Shown here piece after piece: positions 24,252 through 41,445 of a stretch of 64,000 bases of DNA. The position numbers and the translations under genes were made by a program. The stretch lies in the sequence record PV740454.1; one strand, 5' to 3'. How positions within the stretch are numbered: position 1 is the first letter of the stretch; each line of letters starts with the position of its first letter. Under the pieces are notes generated by a model. The model saw nothing but the letters and a program-made list of their open reading frames with translations, had not been told where the DNA came from and searched no databases.

Positions 24252-25691
24252 TTAAAAACTGTATCGGTCAACGCCGACAGTTTTCAGCATGATCTTGACT
24301 GGCTCAAGTTCACCACCTAACAGTGAAGTTAGAATTGATGGGCTACAACCCGAAACCAGTGCAGTACCTGCTTCACCTGATTTAACAGGAACGTTGTCTA
24401 GACGACCACGAATGTTCCAGAAAACTAGCTGAGGCATATCATAACCAGCACGTGCGTACTTAGCTTTGATTGCATCGAAGTTAGCAACTTCTGCTCGACC
24501 ATACCAACCACCACCGCGATTTGCTTGGTCGAATTCCATGTCACTCATGATAAGCAACTTGGTTGGCATATCTTCTTGTGAAAGATTTGCACGACTAGCA
24601 CGTTCTAAAAGAACGTCGAAACATTTCCCGATGTTAGTGCTCATGTCTTCGCCTGAGCGATTCATGTTCGAAAGACGCTCTTTCAGCGTGTTACCGCTCA
24701 ACTTGTGGAAGTGCGGATTACTTGAGAACGAAATGAATTGATCTTTGAAGATACCTTCATTGCGCTCAGCAACGTAAATGCCGAGAGACATTGCTACTTG
24801 CTTACAAGTAACTGCGTTAGCAGCGTGTACACCGTTGATCGGTGTGCTCATAGATCCAGACACGTCTACAACAGGGATGATACGCTCATCAGAGCCTTCC
24901 ATGTAGTTCGGTAGAGCTTTCCATTGCTCGTTCGCTACAGATGCGTTACCGCGTTCAACGCTTTTAACAACATCGTATGGGAACAATGCACCAGCGTTGA
25001 TCTTCGCTTCACCTTTTTGTAGTGATTCGATGTAGTTTGTGTAACGAGTTTCAGCGTTACGACCGAATGCTTTTTGATAACGAGCAGACGCTACAGAAGG
25101 CAACTTACCGAAGTCGATTGCATCCCAATCTTTCGCACACATCTTTTGTTCAACAGTGTCAGACAAAAGAGCAAGAATCTTACGCCACTGCTTAGCAGTT
25201 ACACCAAGAGATTTGATCGTGCGCTTGAACACGTGACCGTTCTTGCTGTTTTCACGAGGGAACCACTTAGCAGCAAGCCCGTTTTTGTCATTGACAATCG
25301 CATTTGACCACATAGTGATCGCGTCTTTTTCGAGTTTAGTACCGAAAGCAACGATTAAGTCATCGAAACGACCTAATTCTGGTACTTTTGACATTACAGC
25401 GCGTGCCACTTCTGGCTGTTCATTACAAAGTTTAGCGAACAGAGTACGGAAAGTACCACGTTCACCTGCGCCACCTCGAACGTCACGAGACCATAGCAAG
25501 ATGCGTGTCGCCAGTTCTGGGTTTTCTGCAAACGCACGACCGAACAGTGTTTTAGACTGATCGTTGCCACGCATAGCAGCAATACCGAAGAACAAGTTTA
25601 GACACTCGTTACCTGAAGTGCTGTGCGTAACTGCACCGTTTGCTGTACGTGAATCGTTTGATTGCATAGCGTTCATAAATAGACTTGTCAT
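24252..25691 (-). CDS. TROVE/Ro60-like RNA-binding protein (DUF2828-type helical domain + vWA)
   Basis: RD-x-RGG-x-GER, GRFDDL, LAAKWFPRE; vWA MIDAS VVDVSGSM...T...SDMEFD; start re-assigned to ATG 25691 (GGAG + 9 nt). Confidence 0.8.
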   Translation of the reverse strand: MTSLFMNAMQSNDSRTANGAVTHSTSGNECLNLFFGIAAMRGNDQSKTLFGRAFAENPELATRILLWSRDVRGGAGERGTFRTLFAKLCNEQPEVARAVMSKVPELGRFDDLIVAFGTKLEKDAITMWSNAIVNDKNGLAAKWFPRENSKNGHVFKRTIKSLGVTAKQWRKILALLSDTVEQKMCAKDWDAIDFGKLPSVASARYQKAFGRNAETRYTNYIESLQKGEAKINAGALFPYDVVKSVERGNASVANEQWKALPNYMEGSDERIIPVVDVSGSMSTPINGVHAANAVTCKQVAMSLGIYVAERNEGIFKDQFISFSSNPHFHKLSGNTLKERLSNMNRSGEDMSTNIGKCFDVLLERASRANLSQEDMPTKLLIMSDMEFDQANRGGGWYGRAEVANFDAIKAKYARAGYDMPQLVFWNIRGRLDNVPVKSGEAGTALVSGCSPSILTSLLGGELEPVKIMLKTVGVDRYSF

Positions 25692-25724
25692 TGCTGTAAG
25701 CTCCATTATCAAGGATCAAAAATT

Positions 25725-30536: not shown

Positions 30537-30541
30537 CGTCT

Positions 30542-30763: not shown

Positions 30764-30780
30764 GATATAGTTCTCAAATT

Positions 30781-30854: not shown

Positions 30855-30859
30855 GTTGT

Positions 30860-31162: not shown

Positions 31163-31169
31163 AATTTAC

Positions 31170-31310
31170 CTACGGAAAATAAACTAGTGCTTCGTGATTA
31201 ACTAGACCTTCGATTTCTTCTTCAGTCAGTTCTTCAAGTCGCTTGATTACTTCATCTGGTAAAACACCATCGGGAACTTTAACAGATATCGTCATTAACA
31301 CTTCAGTCAT
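31170..31310 (-). CDS. Small hypothetical protein
   Basis: Start re-assigned to MTEVL (the track start overlaps tRNA-His). Confidence 0.5.
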   Translation of the reverse strand: MTEVLMTISVKVPDGVLPDEVIKRLEELTEEEIEGLVNHEALVYFP

Positions 31311-31336
31311 AATATATTTCTCATTCAAATGTACTT

Positions 31337-31411
31337 TGGGGTGACCGACGGGAATCGAACCCGCGAGTTCCTGAATCACAATCAGGGGCATTACCACTCT
31401 GCCACAGCCAC
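31337..31411 (-). tRNA. trnH: tRNA-His(GTG)
   Basis: Loop TTGTGAT, C73, CCA; genomic -1 base is T. Confidence 0.93.
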
Positions 31412-31486
31412 ACCAAAGTACACTTAATGAACTTTGGGATACATTTACGTGGATCATTCGAGCGTAGCACTACTACGCTAGTAAGT

Positions 31487-31798
31487 TTATTTGATTTTCG
31501 ATAGCATTTTATGCATATCTTTCGTGTTGTTTAGAAAGTCAACATAATGAGCAAAATCAACGTCTCTGTCGTATTGACGAACTAGAGAACTAGTCTTTGC
31601 TAGCCACTCATCGGTGATGATATCATTCAACCCGAAGTTTTTCTTCAGAGCCATTAAGCGTCGCTCGTAATCATCACCGTCGATGTTCATTGGGTCAGGA
31701 GCGATATAGTCAGAAAGAATCTCAGCATTTTTGTCGATACGTTTCATATCGAACTTTTCATCAAGTTGAGATTCAGTGTATTCTTTAAATGATTGCAT
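31487..31798 (-). CDS. Protein with capsid-targeting-like N-terminus
   Basis: MQSFKEYTESQLDE; ACTAAATA at 31824-31831. Confidence 0.75.
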   Translation of the reverse strand: MQSFKEYTESQLDEKFDMKRIDKNAEILSDYIAPDPMNIDGDDYERRLMALKKNFGLNDIITDEWLAKTSSLVRQYDRDVDFAHYVDFLNNTKDMHKMLSKIK

Positions 31799-31822
31799 AG
31801 TCTTATCTCTTGTATTAAAAAC

Positions 31823-32065
31823 TTATTTAGTGTTCTTGAGATAGATACTATCACTCGAAAGCTCTCTTGTAAACATATTTTTGAAATAAATTTCAATATC
31901 GTCTGAAGTAGTAGAAGATTCAATGCTCAATGCAAGTTCTAGAATCTTACCACGTTTATAACCTGCACGCCAACAGTCAAACATAAGTCTGTCCATTTGT
32001 TTCAGTTTTTCAACTTGATTTGGGTGTACGTATTCGTGAGATTCTAGCAAAGCTGGTGTGTTCAT
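31823..32065 (-). CDS. Hypothetical protein
   Basis: 80 aa ORF. Confidence 0.65.
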   Translation of the reverse strand: MNTPALLESHEYVHPNQVEKLKQMDRLMFDCWRAGYKRGKILELALSIESSTTSDDIEIYFKNMFTRELSSDSIYLKNTK

Positions 32066-32087
32066 AATATAGTTCTCATCATAAGAA

Positions 32088-32161
32088 TGGTAGCCCCTGT
32101 CGGATTCGAGCCGACTCTACTTCTGTGTAAGAGAAGCGTACTCCCATTATACTAAGGGGCT
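32088..32161 (-). tRNA. trnV: tRNA-Val(TAC)
   Basis: Loop CTTACAC, AGCCCCT/AGGGGCT, ACCA. Confidence 0.92.
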
Positions 32162-32162
32162 A

Positions 32163-32306
32163 TTAGACTGGGTAATTGTATTTCCATTGATCTGGGTCTG
32201 GTCTACCACAACGAATACACGATGTGCCTAACCAATTTCTCTGACCACAAACACAAGTGTAACCTTGTTGTTCGAAGTTTTCACCACCGATACTAAGAAT
32301 TTTCAT
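32163..32306 (-). CDS. Small zinc-ribbon-like protein
   Basis: MKILSIGG...CVCG-x7-CIRCG. Confidence 0.55.
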   Translation of the reverse strand: MKILSIGGENFEQQGYTCVCGQRNWLGTSCIRCGRPDPDQWKYNYPV

Positions 32307-32321
32307 ACAATCACCAAAAAT

Positions 32322-32395
32322 TGGAGCGGGTACACGGACTCGAACCGACTCTACTTCTGTGTAAGAGAAGCGTACTCCCATTATACTAAGGGACT
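32322..32395 (-). pseudogene. Chimeric tRNA: Val 5' portion fused to Gly 3' end; acceptor stem unpaired
   Basis: 5' part near-identical to 32088-32161; 3' GTGTACCCGCTCCA identical to tRNA-Gly 32763-32837. Confidence 0.85.
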
Positions 32396-32402
32396 ATTAA
32401 CC

Positions 32403-32747
32403 TTATTTGACTTGAACTACAAACGAATTAGGTATAGCTGTTATTACAGGTAATATAAATTCAATCGTTCGTTGAGATAATGCATGAGTCGAAATCAACC
32501 CATTGATCGCCATCGATCTCATTCTACCCAAGTCTTCGTTCAGAACAAAACGAAATCGAACGCGAATATCTTGAATATCAAGATCATTTTTATTACCACT
32601 GATACGATACACCGACTTTAACTTCAAGTATTCAGTAATTAAATCACGCTCAGCTTTGTTACGAACACAAATTATATATGTTCGTTCATTACTCATGTGA
32701 ATCAACATCGCATTTAGAGCATCGATTATATTAGAAGTTTCGTTCAT
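32403..32747 (-). CDS. Hypothetical protein
   Basis: 114 aa ORF. Confidence 0.65.
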   Translation of the reverse strand: MNETSNIIDALNAMLIHMSNERTYIICVRNKAERDLITEYLKLKSVYRISGNKNDLDIQDIRVRFRFVLNEDLGRMRSMAINGLISTHALSQRTIEFILPVITAIPNSFVVQVK

Positions 32748-32762
32748 AGTATTGCCAGAATA

Positions 32763-32837
32763 TGGAGCGGGTACACGGACTCGAACCGAGACGAACGACT
32801 TGGAAGGACATCATGCTACCAATTACATCATACCCGC
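32763..32837 (-). tRNA. trnG: tRNA-Gly(TCC)
   Basis: Loop CTTCCAA, TCCA end. Confidence 0.9.
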
Positions 32838-32842
32838 ATTGT

Positions 32843-33049
32843 TTAATCTGAAGCGTCGAACAAATCACGTATTGCACGTAGATTCGTAAGCTCTACTGTA
32901 AGTGTTCTAATAAAGAACGGGTTAGTCTCTTTAGCGAGACGATTTTCAACATAACGAATTTTATCGCGTATGTTGCCCTTGCTTAGTGTAAAGTAGTCAT
33001 GCTTCTTAACCTTTTTGAATGAATTTAAGCTTGTGTTTAAGCTTGCCAC
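32843..33049 (-). CDS. Hypothetical protein
   Basis: 68 aa basic ORF. Confidence 0.5.
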   Translation of the reverse strand: MASLNTSLNSFKKVKKHDYFTLSKGNIRDKIRYVENRLAKETNPFFIRTLTVELTNLRAIRDLFDASD

Positions 33050-33155
33050 GAGATTTATGTCGCTTACACAGTTTTGTACCGTGATAGCTATGATATTGAT
33101 AAAAGCTAGTTAGCTTCTTATACAACGATTTCATGCATACCCTCATGATTGAAAT

Positions 33156-33231
33156 TGGTGGAGACACCGATACTCGAAATCGGATCTAACGCCGTATGAA
33201 AGCGCCGCTCTACCACTTGAGCTACATCTCC
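33156..33231 (-). tRNA. trnM: tRNA-CAT, probably elongator Met
   Basis: Loop TTCATAC, ACCA. Confidence 0.85.
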
Positions 33232-33244
33232 GTATCTTGGTTTT

Positions 33245-33360
33245 GTATGTTTTACATGACGATAACCAGAAACGTGCATAATAATGCCACGTGATACATC
33301 CTATATCACGGCTAACTGAGTTAGCATATCGTGCCTTGCGGCTGTAGTGTCGTTTCCGAC
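33245..33360 (-). ncRNA. Multi-hairpin structured RNA candidate
   Basis: GTCG-GAAA-CGAC, GCC-GCAA-GGC, GCTAAC/GTTAGC, GTGATA/TATCAC hairpins. Confidence 0.5.
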
Positions 33361-33371
33361 GAATTAAGTAC

Positions 33372-33581
33372 AGACAATACCGAAGTGTTTTTTCGTCTTT
33401 GACATGAATCGGAGTTGACTATCTTATTGGTTCTCAACAAGCAAATATCGTCTGTTTCAGCGACGCGCCTATCTGACTATTTCTAGACAGAGAGAATCTT
33501 TCCTTTCAAGCTGCACCGAAGCACTGCCCAGGTTAAGATCATCACCTTTTTAAGTAAGTAATTTGTTGCTGTATATTGTCT
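33372..33581 (-). ncRNA. Long structured RNA 2 (210 nt), Y-RNA-like closing stem + TACAGCAA
   Basis: AGACAATA/TATTGTCT closing helix; 19-nt identity with RNA 1. Confidence 0.7.
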
Positions 33582-33646
33582 AACTATCTGCACTCGTACG
33601 AATCTCGAAAGGTATCGTAGTTGTCGTGCAGAAGTTCTTAAATCTT

Positions 33647-33883
33647 TTACTCGTCCATCAATCCGTCGTAGAAATCATCCAATGCTGAATGCACACGACG
33701 TAAACGATCAACGTTCCCACGACCGTAGTTCATGTCAGTTTCACGCGCCCAATCCATCATTGCACTAGATTGCATGATTGAATAAGCCTTGTGAAAGAAG
33801 TCTTCAAACTGTTCTGACGATTCAAACTCACGTGGTAATGTTCTTGCTTCGTTTAATTTCTTAAACTCGTTATATGTTTTCAT
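33647..33883 (-). CDS. Internal-head-protein-like small protein
   Basis: MKTYNEFKKLNE; TATAAATA at 33905-33912. Confidence 0.8.
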   Translation of the reverse strand: MKTYNEFKKLNEARTLPREFESSEQFEDFFHKAYSIMQSSAMMDWARETDMNYGRGNVDRLRRVHSALDDFYDGLMDE

Positions 33884-33920
33884 GAGATTCTCCTATTAAA
33901 AACATATTTATACAAGAACT

Positions 33921-33996
33921 TGGCATCCCCACTAGGATTCGAACCTAGAACCACATCCTTAGAAGGGACGTGCTCTTCCAATTGAGCTATGAGGAC
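33921..33996 (-). tRNA. trnR: tRNA-Arg(TCT)
   Basis: Loop CTTCTAA, GCCA. Confidence 0.95.
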
Positions 33997-34070
33997 ATTA
34001 AAAAGATTCGATCCATAAGCTCGTGCAGATGATGGTAGTAAAGAGAATCCGCGCTCATGTGATCGAAATT

Positions 34071-34145
34071 TGGTGGACCGTAAGGGATTCGAACCCTTGA
34101 CTCTGCCTTGCAAGGGCAGTGTATTCCCAATTATACTAACAGCCC
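34071..34145 (-). tRNA. trnA: tRNA-Ala(TGC)
   Basis: Loop CTTGCAA, G3:U70. Confidence 0.95.
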
Positions 34146-34154
34146 ATATTTTAT

Positions 34155-34364
34155 TTACAACTGCGTGATTGAGATATGATCCCAGCCATATAGACCATCA
34201 AGCTCTTCAATCGGCTCACACACAATGTCAGAAATATACTCAGCAACTTTTGCTTCAATTTCTTCATCAGATAGTTTTTCATCAACGGAAAAAGCATCTT
34301 CGTTATTGTTGCCACCGAAATAACCGCCAATGTCATATTCACACCATATTGAAATATATTTCAT
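34155..34364 (-). CDS. Acidic hypothetical protein
   Basis: Start re-assigned to MKYISIW. Confidence 0.6.
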   Translation of the reverse strand: MKYISIWCEYDIGGYFGGNNNEDAFSVDEKLSDEEIEAKVAEYISDIVCEPIEELDGLYGWDHISITQL

Positions 34365-34389
34365 GTTATTCTCACAGTTGTTTTGAAAA

Positions 34390-34465
34390 TGGTGCCCTGA
34401 CACGGATTTGAACCGCGAACCTGCTCATTACAAGTGAGCTGCACTGCCAGTTGTGCTATCAGGGC
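34390..34465 (-). tRNA. trnT: tRNA-Thr(TGT)
   Basis: Loop CTTGTAA, ACCA. Confidence 0.95.
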
Positions 34466-34468
34466 GAT

Positions 34469-34585
34469 ACTGAGTGTCATTACTTGCGCCATCCGAGACT
34501 AGAGATACCAACTCTAAACGGGATTCGAACCCGAAACATTTCTTTTATCGGAAGAATTTGTAATTGTTTGCTGAAAACACTCAAT
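34469..34585 (-). ncRNA. Y-RNA-like tRNA mimic (117 nt)
   Basis: 10-bp closing helix ATTGAGTGTT/GACACTCAGT; TTCAGCAA; anticodon-like hairpin TTCTT-CCGATAA-AAGAA; T arm CGGG-TTCGAAT-CCCG; no D arm or CCA. Confidence 0.75.
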
Positions 34586-34591
34586 GGTATT

Positions 34592-34665
34592 TGGCTGGGA
34601 TATAGAGATTCGAACTCTAACTGACGGAATCAAAATCCGTAGTGCTACCATTACACCATATCCCA
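34592..34665 (-). tRNA. trnQ: tRNA-Gln(TTG)
   Basis: Loop TTTTGAT, GCCA. Confidence 0.95.
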
Positions 34666-34672
34666 ATTGTTC

Positions 34673-34921
34673 TTATCGCTGAAAATAGCCGTGACTCATT
34701 TTGATCTTATCGGCAAATTCGCGAAGCATACGGTCTGCAAGTTCAAACGATAACTCTTTATCAGCGTCACCTTGTTGCTGCAAATCGTGTGCAATTTTAC
34801 TTCGAAGCTCTTCTGGCTTGTACCCGAACACTTGTTTACCCCAGTGTTCTTTAACTCTATGGTACGATTCCATCGAAATGCTATCTCGTCTAGCTTCTTG
34901 AAATTCTGAAAATGTTTTCAT
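34673..34921 (-). CDS. Internal-head-protein-like small protein
   Basis: MKTFSEFQE; TATAAATA at 34945-34952. Confidence 0.75.
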   Translation of the reverse strand: MKTFSEFQEARRDSISMESYHRVKEHWGKQVFGYKPEELRSKIAHDLQQQGDADKELSFELADRMLREFADKIKMSHGYFQR

Positions 34922-34961
34922 GATTATTACCTTTCGTAAAATCATATTTATAAATTATCTT

Positions 34962-35037
34962 TGGCGGAACCGACGGGGCTCGAACCCGCTTCCTTTCCCG
35001 TGACAGGGGAATATGCACCCAGTTACACCTCGGCTCC
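34962..35037 (-). tRNA. trnD: tRNA-Asp(GTC)
   Basis: Loop CTGTCAC, GCCA. Confidence 0.95.
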
Positions 35038-35256
35038 CCAAAGACAACTTACGTTGCTTTGTGCTCGTGCAAACCAAACACTAGCTAAACGACTTCTTGA
35101 TTTCTTAGTTGTACTATACATTCCCTGCTAAGGGCATCATCGTTCTTGTTTTTAACAAATGTCATGAAAGTGAGATCTTGTTATGCAAGAGGTTTCAAAT
35201 CCCTGCATACAAGCAGACATAACAACCAATGCTCTCATACATTGTCATGGTCAAAC

Positions 35257-35332
35257 TGGCGCTCCATGTTGGACTCGAACCAACGACTCTCTGATTAACA
35301 GTCAGACACTCTACCGACTGAGTTAATGAAGC
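35257..35332 (-). tRNA. trnN: tRNA-Asn(GTT)
   Basis: Loop CTGTTAA, GCCA. Confidence 0.95.
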
Positions 35333-35338
35333 ATAATA

Positions 35339-35413
35339 TGGCGACGAAGGAGAATTTCGAAATCTCGACCTGTCGGTTAACAGCCGACTGCTCTGCCTCT
35401 GAGCTACTCCGTC
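35339..35413 (-). tRNA. trnN: tRNA-Asn(GTT), second divergent copy
   Basis: Loop CTGTTAA, GCCA. Confidence 0.9.
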
Positions 35414-35425
35414 ATTAAATTAAAC

Positions 35426-35484
35426 AGTAATCATTCTTTGCTTTTTCAAAATAAAAGTTTAGTATTGTTTGCTGCAAGATTACT
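35426..35484 (-). ncRNA. Minimal Y-RNA-like element (59 nt)
   Basis: AGTAATC/GATTACT closing helix, TGCAGCAA, hairpin CTTTT/AAAAG, AAAGAAT before the 3' strand. Confidence 0.65.
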
Positions 35485-35489
35485 TAAAC

Positions 35490-35563
35490 TGGCAGGGACA
35501 TAGAGATTCGAACTCTAACGAACGGGTTTGGAATCCGTCATGCTGCCGTTACATCATGTCCCT
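35490..35563 (-). tRNA. trnW: tRNA-Trp(CCA)
   Basis: Loop TTCCAAA, GCCA. Confidence 0.93.
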
Positions 35564-35569
35564 AAAATT

Positions 35570-35643
35570 TGGTAGCCCCAGACAGACTCGAACTGTCAAC
35601 GTGCGATTATCGGTCGCGTGTTTTACCGTTAAACTATGGAGCT
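35570..35643 (-). tRNA. trnI: tRNA-Ile(GAT)
   Basis: Loop CCGATAA (C33), ACCA. Confidence 0.92.
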
Positions 35644-35705
35644 AAAGTGAGCACCGAAGTGCTCTTGTTAATCGGTTAAGTGACTAAACTCCCCGGTTAA
35701 CAAAT

Positions 35706-35802
35706 TGGCGGAAGACTAGGGATTCGAACCCTAACAAGCATTTCTGCTCCGACGGTTTTCAAGACCGTTGCCGCTACCCCGAATCTTTCGGCTAAGCCTT
35801 CC
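35706..35802 (-). tRNA. trnS: tRNA-Ser(TGA) with enlarged D loop
   Basis: Loop CTTGAAA, long variable arm, about 17-nt D loop. Confidence 0.88.
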
Positions 35803-35808
35803 TTAATT

Positions 35809-35885
35809 TGGATGCGTGAGGTTGGATTCGAACCAACGACCTTCGGCTTATGAGACCGATGAGCTGACCACTGCTCTACTCCGCA
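35809..35885 (-). tRNA. trnfM: Initiator-like tRNA-Met(CAT), atypical
   Basis: fMet-like D arm (GAGCAGTGGTCAGCTC) and CTCATAA loop; bulged acceptor, U73. Confidence 0.8.
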
Positions 35886-35895
35886 TTTATTCAAC

Positions 35896-35981
35896 AGCTT
35901 GCGTTCTTTGGTCTGTTTATCTCTGTCTGAACTAAGTTCGTCTAGTGATCAATAGATTAAGTAATTTGCAGTATGCAAGCT
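35896..35981 (-). ncRNA. Y-RNA-like element (86 nt)
   Basis: AGCTTGC/GCAAGCT closing helix, TACTGCAA, AAAGAAC before the 3' strand. Confidence 0.65.
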
Positions 35982-35986
35982 AAATC

Positions 35987-36073
35987 TGGTGGTTCGCCTA
36001 GGACTCGAACCTAGAAGCCCGATTAAGGGCGAGGGATTTACAATCCCCTGACTTACCATTAGTCTAACGAACC
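35987..36073 (-). tRNA. trnY: tRNA-Tyr(GTA)
   Basis: Loop TTGTAAA, long variable arm. Confidence 0.95.
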
Positions 36074-36079
36074 AGAATT

Positions 36080-36154
36080 TGGTTCACCCGACGAGATTCG
36101 AACTCGCGCATACTTCCTTGAAAGGGAAGTGACCTACCGTTAGTCTACGGGTGA
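36080..36154 (-). tRNA. trnE: tRNA-Glu(TTC)
   Basis: Loop CTTTCAA, ACCA. Confidence 0.92.
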
Positions 36155-36218
36155 ATTATATTGTATATTGATTTGCAAGCTAATCAACTTGCAAAGCGAT
36201 ACACAATGTATCTGAATT

Positions 36219-36292
36219 TGGTGGGTCCACAGAGATTCGAACTCTGACTGAAGGATTAAAAGTCCCATATGCTACCATTACATCATAGACCC
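36219..36292 (-). tRNA. trnK: tRNA-Lys(TTT)
   Basis: Loop CTTTTAA, ACCA. Confidence 0.93.
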
Positions 36293-36380
36293 AATTTGAT
36301 TTTCACGTTAAGAGCGTTTGCAAAATAACCCAAAACTAAAATCTCTTGCTTGATTTAACTCTTACAAACAAGCTATAATT

Positions 36381-36456
36381 TGGTGCACCCTACGGCTATC
36401 GAGACCGTGACCTGCGGGACTTCAATCCGCCGCTCTACCAACTGAGCTAAGGGTGC
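36381..36456 (-). tRNA. trnF: tRNA-Phe(GAA)
   Basis: Loop TTGAAGT, ACCA; T loop CTCGATA. Confidence 0.9.
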
Positions 36457-36508
36457 AATGTGCGAAGATTTATGTTTTAAGTCAGCTATCGCAAACAGAC
36501 TACATGTT

Positions 36509-36586
36509 TGGTACGCATGAAGAGATTCGAACTCTTAACTTCTGGTTTCTAAGACCAGTGCCTCTGCCAGATTGGGCTACATGCGC
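36509..36586 (-). tRNA. trnL: tRNA-Leu(TAG), short variable loop
   Basis: Loop CTTAGAA, 5-nt variable loop. Confidence 0.9.
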
Positions 36587-36611
36587 ATTAAATTGTAAAC
36601 TTCTTTTCTTC

Positions 36612-36660
36612 ATTATACATGATGTTTTTATCTTTGTAAACATCTTTTTTAATTTATTTT
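36612..36660 (-). promoter_or_regulatory. Strong sigma70/T4-early-type promoter driving the tRNA array
   Basis: GTTTACA-N17-TATAAT with TG and an A-rich UP element. Confidence 0.8.
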
Positions 36661-36791
36661 GAAGAACTTCGTTTTCTATGTGTTAATATTAACACTCACT
36701 CAAGACATCTTAAACACTAATTTGTGAAAAAGTTCGTTAAATTCTATCGTCTCGACAGTACTTAACGAGATACGGTCCTAAGCGTATCAAA

Positions 36792-36867
36792 TGGCACCCA
36801 ATACAAGATTCGAACTCGTAACCTTCGCCTTCGTAGGGCGCTGCTCTTCCAATTGAGCTAATCGGGC
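36792..36867 (-). tRNA. trnR: tRNA-Arg(ACG)
   Basis: Loop CTACGAA, GCCA. Confidence 0.95.
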
Positions 36868-36874
36868 ATTAAAT

Positions 36875-36951
36875 TGGTCCGCGACAAGCGATTCGAACGC
36901 TTAACTTCTCCGCCCCAAACGGAGTACTCTACCAGATTGAGCTAGTCGCGG
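36875..36951 (-). tRNA. trnP: tRNA-Pro(TGG)
   Basis: Loop TTTGGGG, ACCA. Confidence 0.95.
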
Positions 36952-37526: not shown

Positions 37527-37760
37527 TTAACCTAGATGCTTACGCTTATTCATTTCAACTAGAATTTCATCGTTGTAATGCTTGTTAAGCTGTACAAACT
37601 TCTTGTGTTGATCTTCTGTCAACTCATTCGTGTCATTTAGGTGCTTCAAGAACCCAAGAGGCTTACGAAACGACTTACGATACTCGTTTAGACGTTCATC
37701 TGTTAGATTATGCAACTGTTTCGGAGTAAGCAGTACTTTATTAATATCAAAATTACTCAT
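37527..37760 (-). CDS. Hypothetical protein
   Basis: 77 aa; GAGG RBS. Confidence 0.7.
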   Translation of the reverse strand: MSNFDINKVLLTPKQLHNLTDERLNEYRKSFRKPLGFLKHLNDTNELTEDQHKKFVQLNKHYNDEILVEMNKRKHLG

Positions 37761-37785
37761 GTGTAACCTCTCTTTGTTTGTAAAA

Positions 37786-37901
37786 TGGTAGTCGGGGCTG
37801 GATTCGAACCAGCGACCACGTGCTTAACAGGCAATTGAAAGAGTGCTGGAGCGATACTTGACAGTATCATTCTTCGTGCTCTACCACTGAGCTACCCGAC
37901 T
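37786..37901 (-). ncRNA. tRNA-like RNA with about 40-nt insertion in the anticodon arm
   Basis: Normal acceptor, D and T arms + ACCA; insert AAGAAT-[GATACT-GTCA-AGTATC]-GC-TCCAGCAC...TGC-CTGTTAA-GCA. Confidence 0.8.
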
Positions 37902-37906
37902 GTAAA

Positions 37907-38200
37907 TTATTTAATGTTAAAGTCACCGCGTTCAAACGCTGCTAAAAATTCAGCAGTCGAATCAAATGCAATGTATTCTTTACCAGTATGTTCTTTTGTT
38001 CTTACTCTAACCTTACCACCACGAACTGCTACTTCGAACTGCCCAGATTTAACATGAGCGTCTTTTCGAATCGAACCTGACATCATTTTCTCAAGCTTTT
38101 TCGCAAAGTTTACGTCGTTGACAGTCGTAGGGTTCTGTGGCATCAGAGTATCCCAACGAGAATCGCGCATTTCGGTAACAAACTCATCAAAAGTTTTCAT
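37907..38200 (-). CDS. Internal-head-protein-like small protein
   Basis: MKTFDEFVTE; CATAAATA at 38223-38230. Confidence 0.8.
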   Translation of the reverse strand: MKTFDEFVTEMRDSRWDTLMPQNPTTVNDVNFAKKLEKMMSGSIRKDAHVKSGQFEVAVRGGKVRVRTKEHTGKEYIAFDSTAEFLAAFERGDFNIK

Positions 38201-38225
38201 TGTACTCTCCTTTTAAAGAAAGTAT

Positions 38226-38753
38226 TTATGTTCGAAGTTTGAACTTCAGATTTCGCCATTCAAAGTTACGTTTGTTCTTTTCTTTGTAGAACGAATCCCA
38301 GTCAATTGAAATAGGACAATTCTTACTTCCAACACGTGCAATGAACACATCGTGAGTCTTGCTGTATCGCGTTCTAAGCTCGTTTACGCGCTTATCGTAG
38401 TTAGCGATATAATCAGAGCAAGCTTTGTTGTACGCTGCTTTAGAGAAGCGTTCGTTGCTTGCAAACACGTGACCTAGATATGGGCGAATTACACGAACAC
38501 GTTCTCGCGACCATCCCATATCGAAACTGTTCTCGATCTCACCGGTAATCCTTCCCGTCTTTTTACAACGAGCTAGAATAACCCAACAACGCTCACGTCG
38601 AAAATCTTTTCGCGTGTACACGTTAACATGTTCTTCAACATATTCAGCGTGTTTGTTGTTGTAAATCGCTCGAAGACGCTTTCTCTCTTCAGGATCCATT
38701 GCAGCACGTTCTTCTTTAGAGAACGCTTGAGCAAATGTCATTGGCACATTCAT
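38226..38753 (-). CDS. Basic hypothetical protein
   Basis: 175 aa ORF. Confidence 0.7.
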   Translation of the reverse strand: MNVPMTFAQAFSKEERAAMDPEERKRLRAIYNNKHAEYVEEHVNVYTRKDFRRERCWVILARCKKTGRITGEIENSFDMGWSRERVRVIRPYLGHVFASNERFSKAAYNKACSDYIANYDKRVNELRTRYSKTHDVFIARVGSKNCPISIDWDSFYKEKNKRNFEWRNLKFKLRT

Positions 38754-38959
38754 AACATACCTCGCTTACGCTTCAACTGACTTCGCTCAATCTGAGTAGT
38801 AATTTGCTTGTCTTTAGCTTTACTGCGACGAGAGTTACCCCATCGAAACCCAGCACACAGCCCATGTTGATCACGCTTTAACTTTTTTGCAAGCCAATGC
38901 GGAATTTCTTCACCTTTGCGCTGATAGTGTTTAGCAGTATCAGTGTAAGTTTTACCCAT
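38750..38959 (-). CDS. Small basic hypothetical protein
   Basis: 69 aa; GGAG RBS. Confidence 0.65.
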   Translation of the reverse strand: MGKTYTDTAKHYQRKGEEIPHWLAKKLKRDQHGLCAGFRWGNSRRSKAKDKQITTQIERSQLKRKRGML

Positions 38960-38970
38960 AATATTCTCCG

Positions 38971-39208
38971 TGGCGGGTGAGAGAATCGAACTCTCTACTG
39001 GCGCAACACATCGTCAACCCGATAAGAGTTTCGAAGTAAGAGCCTATCAGCATATCAAATTCATTGTCTTTATTTCAACACACAACAGTTCGACCTATCG
39101 ATGTGTTTTTTCTCAACAAGCCCGAGTGATTCAGCACCACCACAGATAGCGAATCTGCAACTGTACTAATGTTCGGTATACACTGCACACAGAGCACCAA
39201 GCCCCGCC
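38971..39208 (-). ncRNA. Large tRNA-like RNA (238 nt): acceptor + T arm enclosing an insert of about 200 nt
   Basis: GGCGGG/CCCGCC stem; GAGAG-TTCGATT-CTCTC T arm; insert shares GCTGAA, GCTTGTTGAGAA and GAAAAAACAC with long RNAs 1 and 2. Confidence 0.7.
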
Positions 39209-39219
39209 ATAATAAATTG

Positions 39220-39297
39220 TGGTGACCCCAACAGGACTCGAACCTGTAACCTACCGATTATGAGTCGGTTGCTCTAACCGAGTTGAGCTATAGGGCC
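39220..39297 (-). tRNA. trnI: tRNA-CAT, probably Ile2 (lysidine type)
   Basis: GGCCC start and GGTTAGAGCAACCGACTCATAATCGG resemble enterobacterial ileX. Confidence 0.85.
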
Positions 39298-39300
39298 ATA

Positions 39301-39669
39301 TTAATTCTCAAGAAATCGACCAATCTTCGCTGCAAAAATGTTCTCTTCTTCTGCAATCAGAGCAACAGATTTTACCTGATGAAATACATCTTGATCATGT
39401 AAGTTATCTAGTTTGCCTGCACATTTTGTCAGTTCTTTGATTGTACGTCTAATCTCTATACCGTCATGCTGACTTACTTCAGGATGCGTGTTGAGATTAT
39501 CCATAACGGGAATTATTTTACCATAACATCCCATTCCGATGAAGTTTATCACAAGTCTATACTGCATTTCAACAGCAAATGAGCAATATTTTCTAAGATT
39601 GCGCTTTACAATCTCACAACGATGCAAGATGCAATCTAGCTCGTCGTTAATGTCATCAAACTTATTCAT
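39301..39669 (-). CDS. Hypothetical protein
   Basis: 122 aa; GAGG RBS. Confidence 0.7.
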   Translation of the reverse strand: MNKFDDINDELDCILHRCEIVKRNLRKYCSFAVEMQYRLVINFIGMGCYGKIIPVMDNLNTHPEVSQHDGIEIRRTIKELTKCAGKLDNLHDQDVFHQVKSVALIAEEENIFAAKIGRFLEN

Positions 39670-39682
39670 AAAACCTCGAAAG

Positions 39683-39803
39683 TGGTGGAGAGTACGGGAT
39701 TTGAACCACGTGACAAAAAGATTTACCTAGTTAAGGTTGCAGCATGAATGCTTGTCAGAATTCTTTAACATTCTTTCGCTCTACCAGACTGAGCTAACTC
39801 TCC
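39683..39803 (-). ncRNA. tRNA-like RNA with about 45-nt anticodon-arm insertion
   Basis: GGAGAGT/ACTCTCC-ACCA; normal D arm; AAAGA/TCTTT stem around an insert containing TGCTGCAA. Confidence 0.75.
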
Positions 39804-39817
39804 GTTGTAAAAACATA

Positions 39818-39941
39818 TTGATGCGGGTGCAGGAGTCGAACCTGCGTCACGATCTTATGAATGATATGCGAATTGATTGCCGTACAGATTCTTATCAGAA
39901 TCAGTTTTTGCTACGTGTGCTAACCACTACACCAACCCGCA
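39818..39941 (-). ncRNA. tRNA-like RNA with anticodon-arm insertion (paralog of 40192-40338)
   Basis: TGCGGGT/ACCCGCA; hairpin GATTCT-GATA-AGAATC then TACGGCAA; T arm GCAGG/CCTGC. Confidence 0.78.
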
Positions 39942-40191
39942 TCAATATGTTTTCGGGAGTGCTTGCATAGACATTTCTCTACACAAGCACAAAATCCTAT
40001 TATATGCCTTATCTAATCATAACACAATCTGGAATCGTGCGCTTTAAGTACGGGATTGATGACCCGTTCGCATATGATTAGCGTAAAAGTATGATTACGC
40101 ACCTTTTCTTCTTCAATGTCCAAGGCAAATAGGACGATGAATACTAGTGCGAGAAGATATACAATCAAATTGTTCACCTCGCTTTGTTAGT

Positions 40192-40338
40192 GAGAGTACA
40201 TTGGTCGAGTGTAACAGAATCGAACTGTTCCCACGATCTCCCTATGATATGCGTAAATTGGTTGCTGAATATAATCATGTCTGATTACAGTATGCTACGT
40301 GTGCTGCCACTACACCAACACTCGACCAATGTACTCTC
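40192..40338 (-). ncRNA. tRNA-like RNA with anticodon-arm insertion and 21-bp extended acceptor helix
   Basis: GAGAGTACATTGGTCGAGTGT perfect inverted repeat; hairpin TGTAATC/GATTATA then TTCAGCAA. Confidence 0.78.
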
Positions 40339-40340
40339 TA

Positions 40341-40489
40341 TATTTTAAATGTGCGCTACTTGCACGCCGACTGAGCGAATTTTAACTCAGCTAGTTTTTG
40401 TTCGTGAGTTAGTCCGCTAAGACTTCTCGCTGCTCGGCAGAACTTAACTGCCCCTATGTATTCATTGCGGCTAGCGCACATTTAAAATA
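40341..40489 (-). ncRNA. Structured RNA with 18-bp closing helix and multiway junction
   Basis: TATTTTAAATGTGCGCTA/TAGCGCACATTTAAAATA; internal GGCAG/CTGCC, TTAG/CTAA, CTGAG/CTCAG hairpins. Confidence 0.65.
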
Positions 40490-40602
40490 TAACTCATCTT
40501 CAGAAAAGAGACAGAAACGATGAGTCTAGTCTGTTTATCAAAGTGTTCATCTTCAAGAAGAGGCGAAAACGATGAACTTAGTTCGCTTAATCAACTGTGT
40601 TA

Positions 40603-40723
40603 ATCTTAACATCTTTTCAGTGTAAGTCAACAACTTTTTTCATTTATTTCATCGAGTTGAAAGTTTGTGTTTCTGTCTCTCGACTCGATGAAATACATTC
40701 TACAGATTTATTTTCGAAAGTCA
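40603..40723 (-). promoter_or_regulatory. Two tandem sigma70-type promoters at the head of the RNA island
   Basis: GTTGTTGACT-N16-TAAGAT and GTTGTTGACT-N16-TAGAAT, each with an A-rich UP region. Confidence 0.7.
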
Positions 40724-40742
40724 ACAACTTTTTCAAAATAAT

Positions 40743-41006
40743 TTAAACAGAAAGAATAATACCGCTTTCCGTCTCACCGCGCTCAAGCGCAGCATGTTTG
40801 ATCTGTAGTTGTGATACCGCTTGTTGAAGCTCAAGAATAGCTTTGTCATAAAGCTTGTTGTTCTCTTTAAGCAAAGTAATCTGATCAGTCTGCAAGCCGA
40901 CAATATACGTCAATAGAACGACGCTCTCATCTGAATTAAGTGATTCAGGGTCTTCTTGATACTTCTTCAATACTGCTTCGGTAGATAGATCAGTCATTGT
41001 TAGCAA
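40743..41006 (-). CDS. Coiled-coil hypothetical protein
   Basis: 87 aa; heptad pattern. Confidence 0.7.
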   Translation of the reverse strand: MLTMTDLSTEAVLKKYQEDPESLNSDESVVLLTYIVGLQTDQITLLKENNKLYDKAILELQQAVSQLQIKHAALERGETESGIILSV

Positions 41007-41445
41007 CCCAATTTAAGTCTAGTGGTTCGATGTATTCATCAACAAGACGAACTTCAGCGTTAACAAACATCGGTGTGATAACGTCATCATAAGATAACGT
41101 AACGTGAGGTTGATAGTCAGGGTAGTCGTGAGTACCACCGATAGAGATAAGATCTTCGTGACGTTCAACTAGTTCATCACATTTCATTTTAGCGACGACT
41201 GCGTGTTTACCGTCTTGTGTTTTCCAGCAGTCAATCTGCTCTATAGTAGCAACGAAGGTTGTATCTACTGTAGGCACGTCAATTTGCTTACGACTATAAA
41301 GCACAGTCACATGAAAATCATCTGGTTCTAGCGGATTTTGCAGACGAAGCGTTTTCTGCAATCGAATAAGTTCTTGTTTGCTTGCTTCGTCTAGCTTGAT
41401 ACCAACGTAAGTTCCCTGACTCTCAAGGAACTTAGATAGTTTCAT
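40990..41445 (-). CDS. 57B: 2H phosphoesterase, T4 gp57B / Acb1-like
   Basis: Two HxT motifs (FHVTVLYS, PHVTLSY); synteny with 57A and gene 1. Confidence 0.88.
   Translation of the reverse strand: MKLSKFLESQGTYVGIKLDEASKQELIRLQKTLRLQNPLEPDDFHVTVLYSRKQIDVPTVDTTFVATIEQIDCWKTQDGKHAVVAKMKCDELVERHEDLISIGGTHDYPDYQPHVTLSYDDVITPMFVNAEVRLVDEYIEPLDLNWVANND

What the first reader, a model, noticed from the sequence alone, without database searches (positions are those of the whole stretch)
37786..40338. Four tRNAs with the motif module grafted into the anticodon arm, apparently as a circular permutation
Seen: 37786-37901, 39683-39803, 39818-39941 and 40192-40338 keep acceptor, D and T arms but replace the anticodon loop with a 40-50 nt insert. 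In the free RNAs the order is strandA-motif...AAGAAT-strandB. In the inserts it is AAGAAT (or AAAAAC/GCATAC)-strandB-loop-strandA-motif, which is the same junction with the chain opened elsewhere. Some retain a small anticodon-like hairpin (CTGTTAA, TTCATAA). 39818 and 40192 are clear paralogs; 39683 fits least well. Inference: chargeable or CCA-ended tRNA bodies that carry a protein-docking site, neither introns nor pseudogenes.
Basis: partly seen in the sequence, partly recalled or inferred. Interest (0 to 1): 0.82.

Follow-up and report, generated by a model that had tools for sequence, protein, structure and literature searches.

The report
tRNA-shaped carriers of a Y-RNA-like module
Four conserved phage genes encode tRNA-shaped RNAs whose anticodon arm carries a small RNA module, found elsewhere as free RNAs beside a Ro60-like protein gene, so they look like a rearranged version of the bacterial Y RNAs that partner Ro60, not like broken tRNA genes.

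Summary
The window is Vibrio phage CZ01, a KVP40-like T4 relative. All four elements are real and lie on the minus strand.

- **Structure.** A covariance model finds exactly these four in the window. On 19 homologues from Vibrio, Aeromonas, cyanobacterial and Erwinia phages, 97.5% of cells pair and 23 of 27 pairs show compensatory changes.
In three elements the 41-49 nt insert splits the 5' strand of the anticodon stem (nt 28/29). A small anticodon hairpin remains, so the loop is not replaced. Only E1 and E2 encode CCA; E3 and E4 end in conserved 20-21 bp stems.
- **Permutation.** This holds. Free RNAs have strandA, then C-N-G-C-A-A, then an A-rich strand, then strandB. The inserts have the reverse order, and their loop CUG-NN-AAG looks like the joined ends.
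- **Protein.** It is Pfam DUF2828+DUF7788, not TROVE, but its model matches Ro60 structures. The module lies within about 400 nt of this gene in Listeria, Campylobacter, Mycobacterium, E. coli and Synechococcus phages.
- **Relatives.** It resembles Dictyostelium Class I RNAs below the Rfam threshold. YrlA has the opposite topology.

Best reading: stable Y-RNA-like partners of the Ro60-like protein. Binding and lack of splicing are untested. KVP40 annotates them as pseudo-tRNAs.

The parts
37786..37901 (-). E1: tRNA-Asn(GUU)-shaped RNA with a 7-bp acceptor and encoded A-CCA. A 41-nt module insert (37834-37874) splits the anticodon stem after nt 28. The anticodon hairpin UGC-CUGUUAA-GCA is kept (loop 37824-37830).
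   Evidence: Rfam tRNA 49.8 bits; model R1 105.4 bits; covariation; ARAGORN calls tRNA-Asn(gtt) once the insert is removed; 98-100% identical in 11 KVP40-like phages.
39683..39803 (-). E2: tRNA-shaped RNA with a 7-bp acceptor, encoded A-CCA and an intact 5-bp anticodon stem (AAAGA/UCUUU). A 43-nt module (about 39723-39765) lies in the 3' part of the anticodon loop, after AUGUUA.
   Evidence: Rfam tRNA 50.2 bits; R1 59.2 bits; orthologues 86-96% identical with compensatory changes in the module hairpin; tRNA-Asn(gtt) after insert removal.
39808..39954 (-). E3: tRNA-shaped core (39821-39941) with a 48-nt module insert (39866-39913) after nt 28. It has an anticodon-like hairpin with an 8-nt loop AUUCAUAA and no CCA. 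The acceptor continues into a 20-bp terminal helix.
   Evidence: R1 122.6 bits; terminal helix conserved at 7+13 bp with sequence changes in KVP40, phi-Grn1, D491s and 1.081.O; loop sequence and length vary among close relatives.
40192..40338 (-). E4: paralogue of E3. tRNA-shaped core (40205-40324) with a 49-nt module insert (40249-40297) and anticodon-like loop AUAGGGA. No CCA; 21-bp terminal helix.
   Evidence: R1 102.4 bits; 97-99% identical across KVP40-like phages and 80% in D491s, with compensatory changes; fold z-score -6.65.
35422..35487 (-). F1: free (open) form of the module in a tRNA-array spacer. AGUAAUC-UUGCAGCAAACAAUAC...CAAAGAAU-GAUUACU-GU.
   Evidence: Rfam Dicty_Class_I_RNA 27 bits, E 0.23, full-length alignment, below the gathering score of 41.5.
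34467..34586 (-). F2: free form of the module with an internal T-arm-like hairpin (UCGGGUUCGAAUCCCG).
35892..35984 (-). F3: free form of the module. AGCUUGC-AUACUGCAAAUUAC...CAAAGAAC-GCAAGCU-GU.
24252..25706 (-). Candidate protein partner (CZ01_174, 484 aa): Pfam DUF2828 + DUF7788 (vWA-like), with a Ro60-like predicted fold.
   Evidence: Pfam and PHROG 850; AF2 model pLDDT 76; Foldseek best hits are Ro60 of Thermus phage phiLo 9l5y (E 5e-8, TM 0.54), D. radiodurans Rsr 2nvo and Ro60 9nfa.
40603..40724 (-). Two tandem sigma-70-like promoter matches (TTGACT-16-TAGAAT and TTGACT-16-TAAGAT) upstream of the E4-E3-E2 cluster.
   Evidence: Consensus scan only.

Best explanation
E1-E4 are expressed, stable non-coding RNAs. 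Each is a tRNA body whose anticodon arm carries a conserved RNA module: a 6-8 bp helix flanked 5' by an A-rich strand and 3' by ..U-W-C-N-G-C-A-A... The same module occurs as free small RNAs whose 5' and 3' ends form the helix, so the tRNA-borne copies are circular permutations closed by a CUG-NN-AAG loop. Inferred: the module is the docking site of the phage's Ro60-like ring protein (DUF2828+vWA, window 24252-25706). The RNAs would then work like bacterial YrlA Y RNAs, with one part holding the Ro-like protein and a tRNA-like part engaging tRNA-recognising enzymes or acting as a decoy. The particle would serve RNA surveillance or repair, or counter-defence, during infection. Shown here: the structure, selection, permutation, wide distribution, gene-RNA adjacency and the Ro60-like fold. 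Not shown: binding, absence of splicing, aminoacylation, and the biological role.
For: (1) Structure and selection: 97.5% paired cells, 23/27 pairs with double changes, 0/500 shuffles; the same helices from RNAalifold; E1 and E4 97-100% identical where flanks are about 85%. (2) Same module in both topologies, 20 closed and 15 open copies. (3) Module RNAs lie within about 400 nt of the DUF2828 gene in unrelated phages: Synechococcus BUCT-ZZ01 (two closed-type tRNAs immediately downstream, two open-type upstream), Listeria AG20 (three), Campylobacter F356 (two), Mycobacterium Gabriela (three) and E. coli JH2. (4) Every carrier of the closed type checked also encodes the protein: KVP40-likes, Aeh1, BUCT-ZZ01, and the Erwinia and Serratia jumbo phages. 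T4 has the syntenic 57B-tRNA region but no R1 hit above ordinary tRNA scores, and its rnaC/rnaD sequences show no C-N-GCAA. (5) The protein model matches Ro60. (6) In Gabriela the same parts (module strands, CCA-CUGUUAA-UGG hairpin, T arm, closed acceptor, D arm) occur in YrlA topology. KVP40 Pseudo-5 and D479_28 have the module directly capping a 5-bp anticodon stem with no anticodon loop. (7) Published hint: Bas63 gp130, Ro60-like and just upstream of the tRNA array, counters the Ppl defence, and its authors guessed that some 'tRNAs' are Y RNAs (10.1101/2024.10.10.617714).
Against: There are no binding or expression data. In CZ01 the protein gene lies 12-15 kb from E1-E4, and in the jumbo phages about 190 kb away, so adjacency holds only in some lineages. 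Salmonella phage SE_PL shows no obvious module in the two gaps beside its gene, by eye. The protein is not Pfam TROVE and has no sequence-level PDB hit. Removing the inserts in silico gives perfect cloverleaves, and E1-type RNAs keep an Asn anticodon loop CUGUUAA across Vibrio, Aeromonas and cyanophages, which also fits a decoding or spliced tRNA. Rfam YrlA and Class I models stay below their thresholds.
Confidence: 0.55

Rival explanations
1. The inserts are small introns. They are cut out and the halves ligated, giving ordinary tRNA-Asn (E1, E2) and other tRNAs.
For: Removing the insert in silico restores 5-bp anticodon stems, and ARAGORN then calls tRNA-Asn(gtt) for E1 and E2 and tRNA-Pro(agg) for E4. 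Some relatives carry RNA ligases near the DUF2828 gene (RtcB-type 'tRNA splicing ligase' and an RNA ligase in Listeria AG20; RNA ligase in SE_PL).
Against: The module is conserved in sequence across very distant phages and also exists as free RNAs with no exons. KVP40 Pseudo-5 and D479_28 have no anticodon loop at all. E3 would give an 8-nt loop, and its loop varies in length and sequence among close relatives. E3 and E4 have 20-21 bp terminal helices and no CCA. CZ01 already has two normal tRNA-Asn(GUU) genes. No ribozyme or intron family hit the region. Position 28/29 is not a canonical intron site, and bacteria are not known to have a tRNA splicing endonuclease (background knowledge).
Confidence: 0.12
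2. The RNAs are functional as described, but the module is recognised by something other than the DUF2828 protein, such as a host RNA-binding protein, a nuclease or processing enzyme, or another phage protein. The adjacency to DUF2828 would then reflect shared placement in tRNA and early-gene regions.
For: In Dictyostelium the only proven direct binder of the look-alike Class I RNAs is the RRM protein Rnp1A/CIBP (PMC7919456). DUF2828 genes usually sit next to tRNA arrays anyway. In CZ01 and the jumbo phages the gene is far from the RNAs.
Against: In Gabriela, Campylobacter F356 and BUCT-ZZ01 the module RNAs fill the gaps directly flanking the gene, with few or no ordinary tRNAs around. This mirrors the known Ro60-Y RNA gene arrangement (PMC4201824; PMC12135203).
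Confidence: 0.2
3. They are unspliced but translationally active or chargeable tRNAs with an extra arm, for example special tRNA-Asn species that resist host anticodon nucleases.
For: E1 and E2 have canonical acceptor, D and T arms and an encoded CCA. The E1-type loop CUGUUAA is kept in most E1-type RNAs from Vibrio, Aeromonas and cyanophages (D479 has CCGUUAA), and G73 is present in several.
Against: A 41-nt arm at nt 28/29 lies where the ribosome contacts the anticodon stem (background knowledge). E3, E4 and the Pseudo-5 type cannot decode. The same module occurs without any tRNA.
Confidence: 0.08
4. They are decaying tRNA pseudogenes hit by a small mobile repeat, as the KVP40 annotation 'tRNA-Pseudo' implies.
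For: GenBank annotations: tRNA-Pseudo-3, -4 and -5 in KVP40, tRNA-OTHER in phi-pp2 and phi-Grn1. The set of elements varies between close relatives: E2 is replaced by a Pseudo-5-type in nt-1 and QD01, while KVP40 has both.
Against: They are more conserved than the neighbouring protein genes, all helices show compensatory changes, and homologues exist in Aeromonas, cyanobacterial and Erwinia phages. A DNA insertion cannot produce both permuted topologies.
Confidence: 0.03

Closest known systems
YrlA (bacterial and mycobacteriophage Y RNA, Rfam RF02553), partner of Ro60/Rsr
   Same: It combines a tRNA-like domain (D arm, T arm, acceptor-like stem) with a protein-binding helix that has a conserved internal loop. 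The YrlA consensus has AUGCu on the strand 3' of the outer-stem 5' strand and AaAcUuG before the 3' strand. Here the corresponding strands are C-N-GCAA and A-rich AAAAAC. It is encoded next to a Ro60-type ring + vWA protein. Mycobacterium phage Gabriela shows the present module in YrlA topology.
   Different: The topology is opposite: in YrlA the ends lie in the Ro-binding stem and the acceptor is closed by a loop, whereas here the acceptor is open (with CCA in E1 and E2) and the module helix is closed. E1, E3 and E4 also keep an anticodon hairpin. No RF02553 hit reaches the gathering score of 69 bits; the best, 28.2 bits, is an artefact spanning the E3 T arm and the E2 D arm. The protein is DUF2828, not Pfam TROVE.
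Dictyostelium Class I RNAs (Rfam RF01414)
   Same: Applies to the free form: a 6-7 bp stem joining the 5' and 3' ends, the motif ..UUACAGCAA.. right after the 5' stem strand, an A-rich run before the 3' stem strand, and a CUGU 3' tail (PMC7919456; consensus). The Dictyostelium-trained model aligns end to end with phage RNAs at 27, 22.8, 20.1 and 18.9 bits.
   Different: All scores are below the gathering score of 41.5, and the motif is short. Class I RNAs were reported as restricted to dictyostelids, with the RRM protein Rnp1A as direct binder. The four tRNA-borne copies are permuted. Whether Dictyostelium has a DUF2828 protein could not be established here.
tRNA pseudogenes / tRNA-OTHER of KVP40, phi-pp2, phi-Grn1 and Aeh1 (GenBank annotation)
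   Same: These are the same loci: tRNA-Pseudo-3 is E1 and Pseudo-4 is E2. E3 and E4 are annotated tRNA-OTHER in phi-pp2 and tRNA-Cys/tRNA-OTHER in phi-Grn1; KVP40 itself leaves them unannotated.
   Different: The annotation implies loss of function, whereas conservation and covariation show selection on the whole structure including the insert.
Circularly permuted tRNA-like RNAs (two-piece tmRNA; permuted tRNA genes of red algae) - recalled from background knowledge
   Same: The same fold is reached with the chain opened at a different place.
   Different: Those cases permute the tRNA or tmRNA itself. Here the tRNA is in normal order and the grafted module is permuted relative to its free form.

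Membership tests
tRNA (RF00005) | Score at or above the Rfam gathering score (29 bits) with acceptor, D and T arms | tested here: inconclusive
   E1 49.8 and E2 50.2 bits pass, with 54- and 45-nt insertions. E3 reaches only 25.7 bits to tRNA-Sec and E4 has no hit.
tRNA (RF00005) | Continuous 5-bp anticodon stem with a 7-nt loop | tested here: not met
   In E1, E3 and E4 the stem is split 2+3 bp by a 41-49 nt insert. In E2 the stem is intact but the loop holds a 43-nt insert. E3 has an 8-nt loop.
tRNA (RF00005) | 7-bp acceptor with an unpaired discriminator and CCA end | tested here: inconclusive
   Met by E1 and E2 (encoded A-CCA). Not met by E3 and E4 (20-21 bp continuous helix, no CCA).
Intron-containing tRNA | Self-splicing group I core or another known ribozyme in the insert | tested here: not met
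   No such Rfam family at E up to 10 in 37700-40400; the inserts are only 41-49 nt.
Intron-containing tRNA | Excision and ligation of the insert in vivo | not testable with these tools
   Needs RNA data. In silico removal restores cloverleaves.
YrlA / Y RNA (RF02553) | Score at or above the gathering score (69 bits) | tested here: not met
   Best hit 28.2 bits, an artefact across the E3/E2 junction; 21.4 bits in phage Gabriela.
YrlA / Y RNA (RF02553) | 5' and 3' ends form the protein-binding stem and the tRNA-like acceptor is closed by a loop | tested here: not met
   E1-E4 have the opposite topology. The free RNAs F1-F3 and the Gabriela RNA have the YrlA-like topology.
YrlA / Y RNA (RF02553) | Encoded with a Ro60 (TROVE + vWA) protein | tested here: inconclusive
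   The protein is Pfam DUF2828+DUF7788, not TROVE, but its model matches Ro60 structures. It lies 12-15 kb from E1-E4 here and is adjacent in other phages.
YrlA / Y RNA (RF02553) | Binding to the Ro60-type protein | not testable with these tools
   Needs pull-down or gel-shift experiments.
Dictyostelium Class I RNA (RF01414) | Score at or above the gathering score (41.5 bits) | tested here: not met
   F1 27 bits; Listeria phage RNAs 22.8 and 20.1; Gabriela 18.9. E1-E4 give no hit because they are permuted.
Dictyostelium Class I RNA (RF01414) | Terminal 6-bp stem, motif ..UUACAGCAA next to the 5' stem strand, and a CUGU 3' end | tested here: met
   Met by the free form (F1, F3, the Listeria, BUCT and JH2 copies). 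In E1-E4 the same features appear in permuted order.
tRNA pseudogene | Relaxed constraint: decay of helices, faster change than the flanks | tested here: not met
   More conserved than the flanks, with compensatory changes in every helix.

The most novel reading that the evidence does not exclude
The helix + A-rich / C-N-GCAA module is an ancient, cross-kingdom ligand of DUF2828 Ro60-like proteins. Phage free RNAs, the tRNA-borne permuted copies and Dictyostelium Class I RNAs would then be one RNA class. E1 and E2 would be matured, and perhaps charged, like tRNAs, bringing the Ro-like ring to tRNA-handling machinery to defeat host defences such as Ppl. This would give a function to 'pseudo-tRNAs' unexplained since the first KVP40-type phage genomes were annotated, to an uncharacterised protein family found in phages, plants, fungi and protists, and possibly to Class I RNAs.
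Probability: 0.3. Interest if true: 0.9.

Novelty: new variant of a known kind. Interest (0 to 1): 0.78.

Why it matters
Ro60-Y RNA particles are known in animals, bacteria and a few phages, but the DUF2828 branch of Ro60-like proteins has no known RNA partner. That branch occurs in over 700 sequenced phages here and in plants, fungi and protists. These loci offer a concrete, sequence-defined candidate ligand in two topologies, which is a natural circular-permutation experiment. They also reclassify 'pseudo-tRNAs' of KVP40-type, Aeromonas, cyanobacterial and jumbo phages as selected RNAs. One homologous protein (Bas63 gp130) is already reported to counter an anti-phage system, so the RNAs may be cofactors of a counter-defence. 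The resemblance to Dictyostelium Class I RNAs, whose mechanism is unknown, gives a testable cross-kingdom lead.

Tried and rejected
- **Loose descriptor scan** (stem + C.GCA + A-rich) over the window: 7 closed and 26 open matches on the RNA strand, against 2 and 35 on the other strand and shuffle means of 3.9 and 27.9. It is not specific and was dropped.
- **12-mer and 8-mer motif searches** in the window were near chance on their own. They helped only to locate the free RNAs.
- **IMG/VR pattern scan** (16 specified bases): at least 120 matches, about what chance would give. Model R1 confirmed only Aeh1 itself plus three further contigs, L057, L062 and L078.
- **Acb1-based locus search in IMG/VR** returned only KVP40 and VH7D.
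- **The YrlA hit at 39778-39849** is an artefact of the E3 T arm lying next to the E2 D arm.
- **Dictyostelium DUF2828 homologue.** A length-window trick exposed plant and fungal homologues. A full HMMER search from a fungal homologue plus cluster look-up of the ten most AT-biased hits gave Naegleria, Willaertia and mites, but no Dictyostelium. This is inconclusive.
- **Avesson 2011**, the Class I RNA pull-down paper, is not held.
- **Single-sequence MFE folds** did not recover the cloverleaves. Only comparative analysis did.
- **An L1-L2 helix** was considered (GAAG/YUUC in E1) but is not conserved in other members and not predicted by RNAalifold.
- **Negative control.** T4 has the syntenic 57B-tRNA region. 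Its rnaC and rnaD sequences lack C-N-GCAA, and R1 gives no hit above ordinary tRNA scores.


Full report
**Source and context**

The window is Vibrio phage CZ01 (PV740454.1; window x = record x + 62000), a KVP40/nt-1-like member of Straboviridae. Its minus strand carries a long tRNA array: 26 ARAGORN genes at 29247-36951, plus tRNA-Met at 39220-39297. The four elements lie just upstream of this array in transcription order. They sit among small ORFs of unknown function and downstream of gp57B, which Pfam assigns to Acb1 and not to an RNA ligase. Two sigma-70-like promoter matches on the minus strand (40724-40697 and 40630-40603) precede the E4-E3-E2 cluster. This is a consensus scan only.

**Observation**

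- **Rfam.** The tRNA model passes its threshold for E1 (37789-37901, 49.8 bits) and E2 (39686-39803, 50.2 bits), each with a 45-54 nt insertion at the anticodon arm. E3 scores only 25.7 bits to tRNA-Sec, and E4 scores nothing.
- **Earlier annotation.** KVP40 annotates E1 and E2 as tRNA-Pseudo-3 and -4. Phi-pp2 and phi-Grn1 annotate E3 and E4 as tRNA-OTHER or tRNA-Cys, and other records call the set 113-123 nt 'tRNAs'.
- **Conservation.** Against eleven relatives, E1 is 98-100% identical and E4 97-99%, where the region as a whole is about 85% identical. The divergent phage D491s keeps all four at 78-86% where its region is about 71%.

**Distant homologues**

A BLASTN search turned up homologues in several other phages:

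- Aeromonas phage Aeh1
- Synechococcus phage BUCT-ZZ01
- Vibrio phages D479 and 1.081.O
- the 355-kb Erwinia and Serratia jumbo phages

**Structure**

I aligned nineteen such RNAs with MAFFT (A2) and tested a structure derived by eye. It comprises a 7-bp acceptor, the D arm, a 2-bp outer anticodon stem, a 6-bp module hairpin P, a 3-bp inner anticodon stem and the T arm.

- 97.5% of cells pair, 23 of 27 pairs change on both sides, and no shuffle of 500 reaches this. Sliding the partners drops pairing to 32-44%.
- RNAalifold independently returns the same helices, except the 2-bp outer stem.
- A covariance model built from this alignment (R1) scores the family above 90 bits. The loop-located variants (E2 and the Pseudo-5 type) score 58-72 bits, and ordinary tRNAs at most 49 bits. 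It finds exactly the four elements in the window.

**Corrections to the description**

- In E1, E3 and E4 the insert (41, 48 and 49 nt) does not replace the anticodon loop. It interrupts the 5' strand of the anticodon stem between nt 28 and 29, creating a three-way junction that keeps an anticodon-like hairpin.
- Deleting the inserts in silico gives ARAGORN tRNA-Asn(gtt) for E1 and E2, an 8-nt loop for E3, and tRNA-Pro(agg) for E4.
- E1 and E2 have normal acceptors and an encoded A-CCA. E3 and E4 have none; their acceptors continue into uninterrupted 20- and 21-bp helices. The length of these helices is conserved while the sequence changes across orthologues. Aeh1 Y1 and D479_29 share this long-stem form. 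The cyanophage and Erwinia members have the CCA form.

**The module and its permutation**

The tRNA-array spacers hold free RNAs F1 (35422-35487), F2 (34467-34586) and F3 (35892-35984). Their order is strandA, then ..UWC-N-GCAA.., then a variable part, then an A-rich strand (AAAGAAU), then strandB. The inserts read A-rich strand, strandB, loop, strandA..C-N-GCAA...

- In 20 closed and 15 open copies the C-N-G-C-A core lies 3-4 nt after strandA, and the 9 nt before strandB are A-rich.
- The closed loops read CUG-NN-AAG. Many open copies end in CUGU or CAGU after strandB. The loop therefore looks like the two ends of the free form joined by one or two nucleotides.

**Link to a protein**

- **Fold.** CZ01_174 (24252-25706, minus strand) is Pfam DUF2828+DUF7788 and PHROG 850 'RNA-binding protein'. 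It is not TROVE and has no sequence-level PDB match. An AlphaFold model from a 30-sequence alignment (pLDDT 76) has Ro60 structures as its only strong Foldseek hits: phage phiLo Ro60 9l5y (E 5e-8), Rsr 2nvo and Ro60 9nfa.
- **Distribution.** Homologues occur in 711 phage records.
- **Adjacency.** The module lies directly beside this gene in unrelated lineages:
  - BUCT-ZZ01 has two closed-type tRNAs (CAU type and Asn type, both with CCA) immediately downstream, and two open-type RNAs in the upstream gap.
  - Listeria AG20 has three open-type RNAs in the 395-nt upstream gap.
  - Campylobacter F356 has two between tRNA-Met and the gene.
  - Mycobacterium phage Gabriela has three in the 370-nt downstream gap.
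  - E. coli phage JH2 has at least two within about 600 nt downstream.
- **Chance estimate.** The 8-mer WACAGCAA is expected about 0.01 times in such a gap, assuming equal base frequencies. Two or three copies are seen in each (counts; the arithmetic is mine).
- **Co-occurrence.** The jumbo phages that carry closed-type RNAs also encode the protein, although about 190 kb away.
- **Negative control.** T4 shares the 57B-tRNA synteny. Model R1 gives no hit above ordinary tRNA scores, and its rnaC and rnaD sequences lack the core motif.

**Relation to known RNAs**

- **YrlA.** This tRNA-mimicking partner of bacterial Ro60 has its ends in the protein-binding stem and a loop-closed acceptor. Its consensus internal loop has AUGCu on one strand and AaAcUuG on the other (PMC4201824). 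The Gabriela RNA shows the present module, a CCA-CUGUUAA-UGG hairpin, a T arm, a closed acceptor and a D arm in exactly that topology. KVP40 Pseudo-5 and D479_28 have the module capping a 5-bp anticodon stem with an open acceptor. E1-E4 are thus permuted relatives of a YrlA-like design, but no member reaches the RF02553 threshold.
- **Dictyostelium Class I RNAs.** Unexpectedly, the free form matches the Rfam model RF01414 end to end, at 27, 22.8, 20.1 and 18.9 bits. It shares the defining terminal stem, the ..UUACAGCAA motif, an A-rich run and the CUGU tail (PMC7919456). All scores are below the gathering score of 41.5, so this is a resemblance and not membership.
- **DUF2828 in eukaryotes.** The family is present in plants, fungi, heteroloboseans and mites. 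I could not establish whether Dictyostelium has one, nor whether DDB_G0281243, an uncharacterised protein pulled down with a Class I RNA, belongs to it.

**Mechanism**

- **Most likely (0.55).** These are stable Y-RNA-like RNAs whose module docks the Ro60-like protein and whose tRNA body supplies tRNA mimicry. The role would be in RNA surveillance, repair or counter-defence.
- **Context that fits.** RNA ligases sit beside the gene in Listeria AG20 and SE_PL. Bas63 gp130 is Ro60-like and is reported to counter the Ppl defence; its authors speculated that nearby 'tRNAs' are Y RNAs.
- **Status.** Binding, processing and function are inferences.
- **Rivals.** The alternatives are spliced introns (0.12), a different binding partner (0.20), decoding-competent tRNAs with an extra arm (0.08) and pseudogenes (0.03).
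- **Unexplained.** The Asn anticodon loop CUGUUAA is kept in most E1-type RNAs from Vibrio, Aeromonas and cyanophages (D479 has CCGUUAA), and it recurs in the Gabriela RNA. This suggests that the loop itself is recognised by something.

**Novelty**

In the searchable literature I found only 'pseudo-tRNA' annotations and the Bas63 speculation. I found no description of the module, its permutation, its spread or the Class I resemblance. I rate this a new variant of a known kind, namely Ro60-type RNPs with tRNA-mimic RNAs.

Noticed in passing
window 38965-39212 (-): A noncoding stretch of about 245 nt whose ends look like a tRNA acceptor (GGCGGGG.../...ACCCGCC) with a T arm (GAGAGUUCGAUUCUCUC) and about 170 nt in between. 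ARAGORN finds no tmRNA; R1 hits only the T-arm end (16.6 bits); fold z-score -2.4.
   Followed up: partly
window 34467-34586, 35422-35487, 35892-35984 (-): Free small RNAs in tRNA-array spacers resemble Dictyostelium Class I RNAs (terminal stem, UUACAGCAA-like motif, CUGU tail). That class was reported as restricted to dictyostelids.
   Followed up: partly
window 35710-35802 (-): A tRNA-Ser(UGA)-like gene missed by ARAGORN (Rfam tRNA-Sec 40.5 bits). VH1_2019 annotates a tRNA-Ser(tga) in the corresponding part of its array.
   Followed up: no
window 40341-40360 and 40468-40490: A 20-bp inverted repeat (TATATTTTAAATGTGCGCTA / its complement), about 105 nt apart, lies between the promoter-like repeats and E4. 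It may form a long hairpin in the same transcript.
   Followed up: no
window 40500-40740 (-): Two tandem units of about 95 nt, each carrying a strong sigma-70-like promoter match (TTGACT-16-TAGAAT / TAAGAT).
   Followed up: partly
window 40990-41445 (-): gp57B, annotated 'RNA ligase' in many T4-like records, matches Pfam Acb1 (anti-CBASS, E 1e-47) and only weakly the 2H phosphoesterases.
   Followed up: partly
window 23681-24205 (-): The gene directly downstream of the Ro60-like gene encodes a 174-aa RNaseH_like (PF04308) protein, which could be a partner nuclease.
   Followed up: no
window 29247-36951 (L002 annotation): The CZ01 GenBank record lists no tRNA features in this stretch and calls many tiny 'hypothetical proteins' over the tRNA array.
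   Followed up: no
L016 4174-4290 (-), Aeromonas phage Aeh1: A tRNA-like RNA with two consecutive T-arm-like hairpins (GAACGGUUCGAUUCCGUU and CACUGGUUCGAAUCCAGU), next to the two module-bearing tRNAs.
   Followed up: no
L022 10758-16230, Listeria phage AG20; L024 2438-3646, Salmonella phage SE_PL: The DUF2828 gene sits next to RNA-repair genes: an RtcB-type 'tRNA splicing ligase', an RNA ligase and a phosphoesterase in AG20, and an RNA ligase in SE_PL. This recalls the Salmonella rsr-yrlBA-rtcBA operon.
   Followed up: no
L001 5378-5490 (KVP40 tRNA-Pseudo-5); L004 5117-5228; L007 5242-5353; L018 5474-5589: A fifth element type, in which the module directly caps a 5-bp anticodon stem with no anticodon loop, is absent from CZ01. 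It replaces E2 in nt-1 and QD01 and coexists with E2 in KVP40, so the element set turns over between close relatives.
   Followed up: partly
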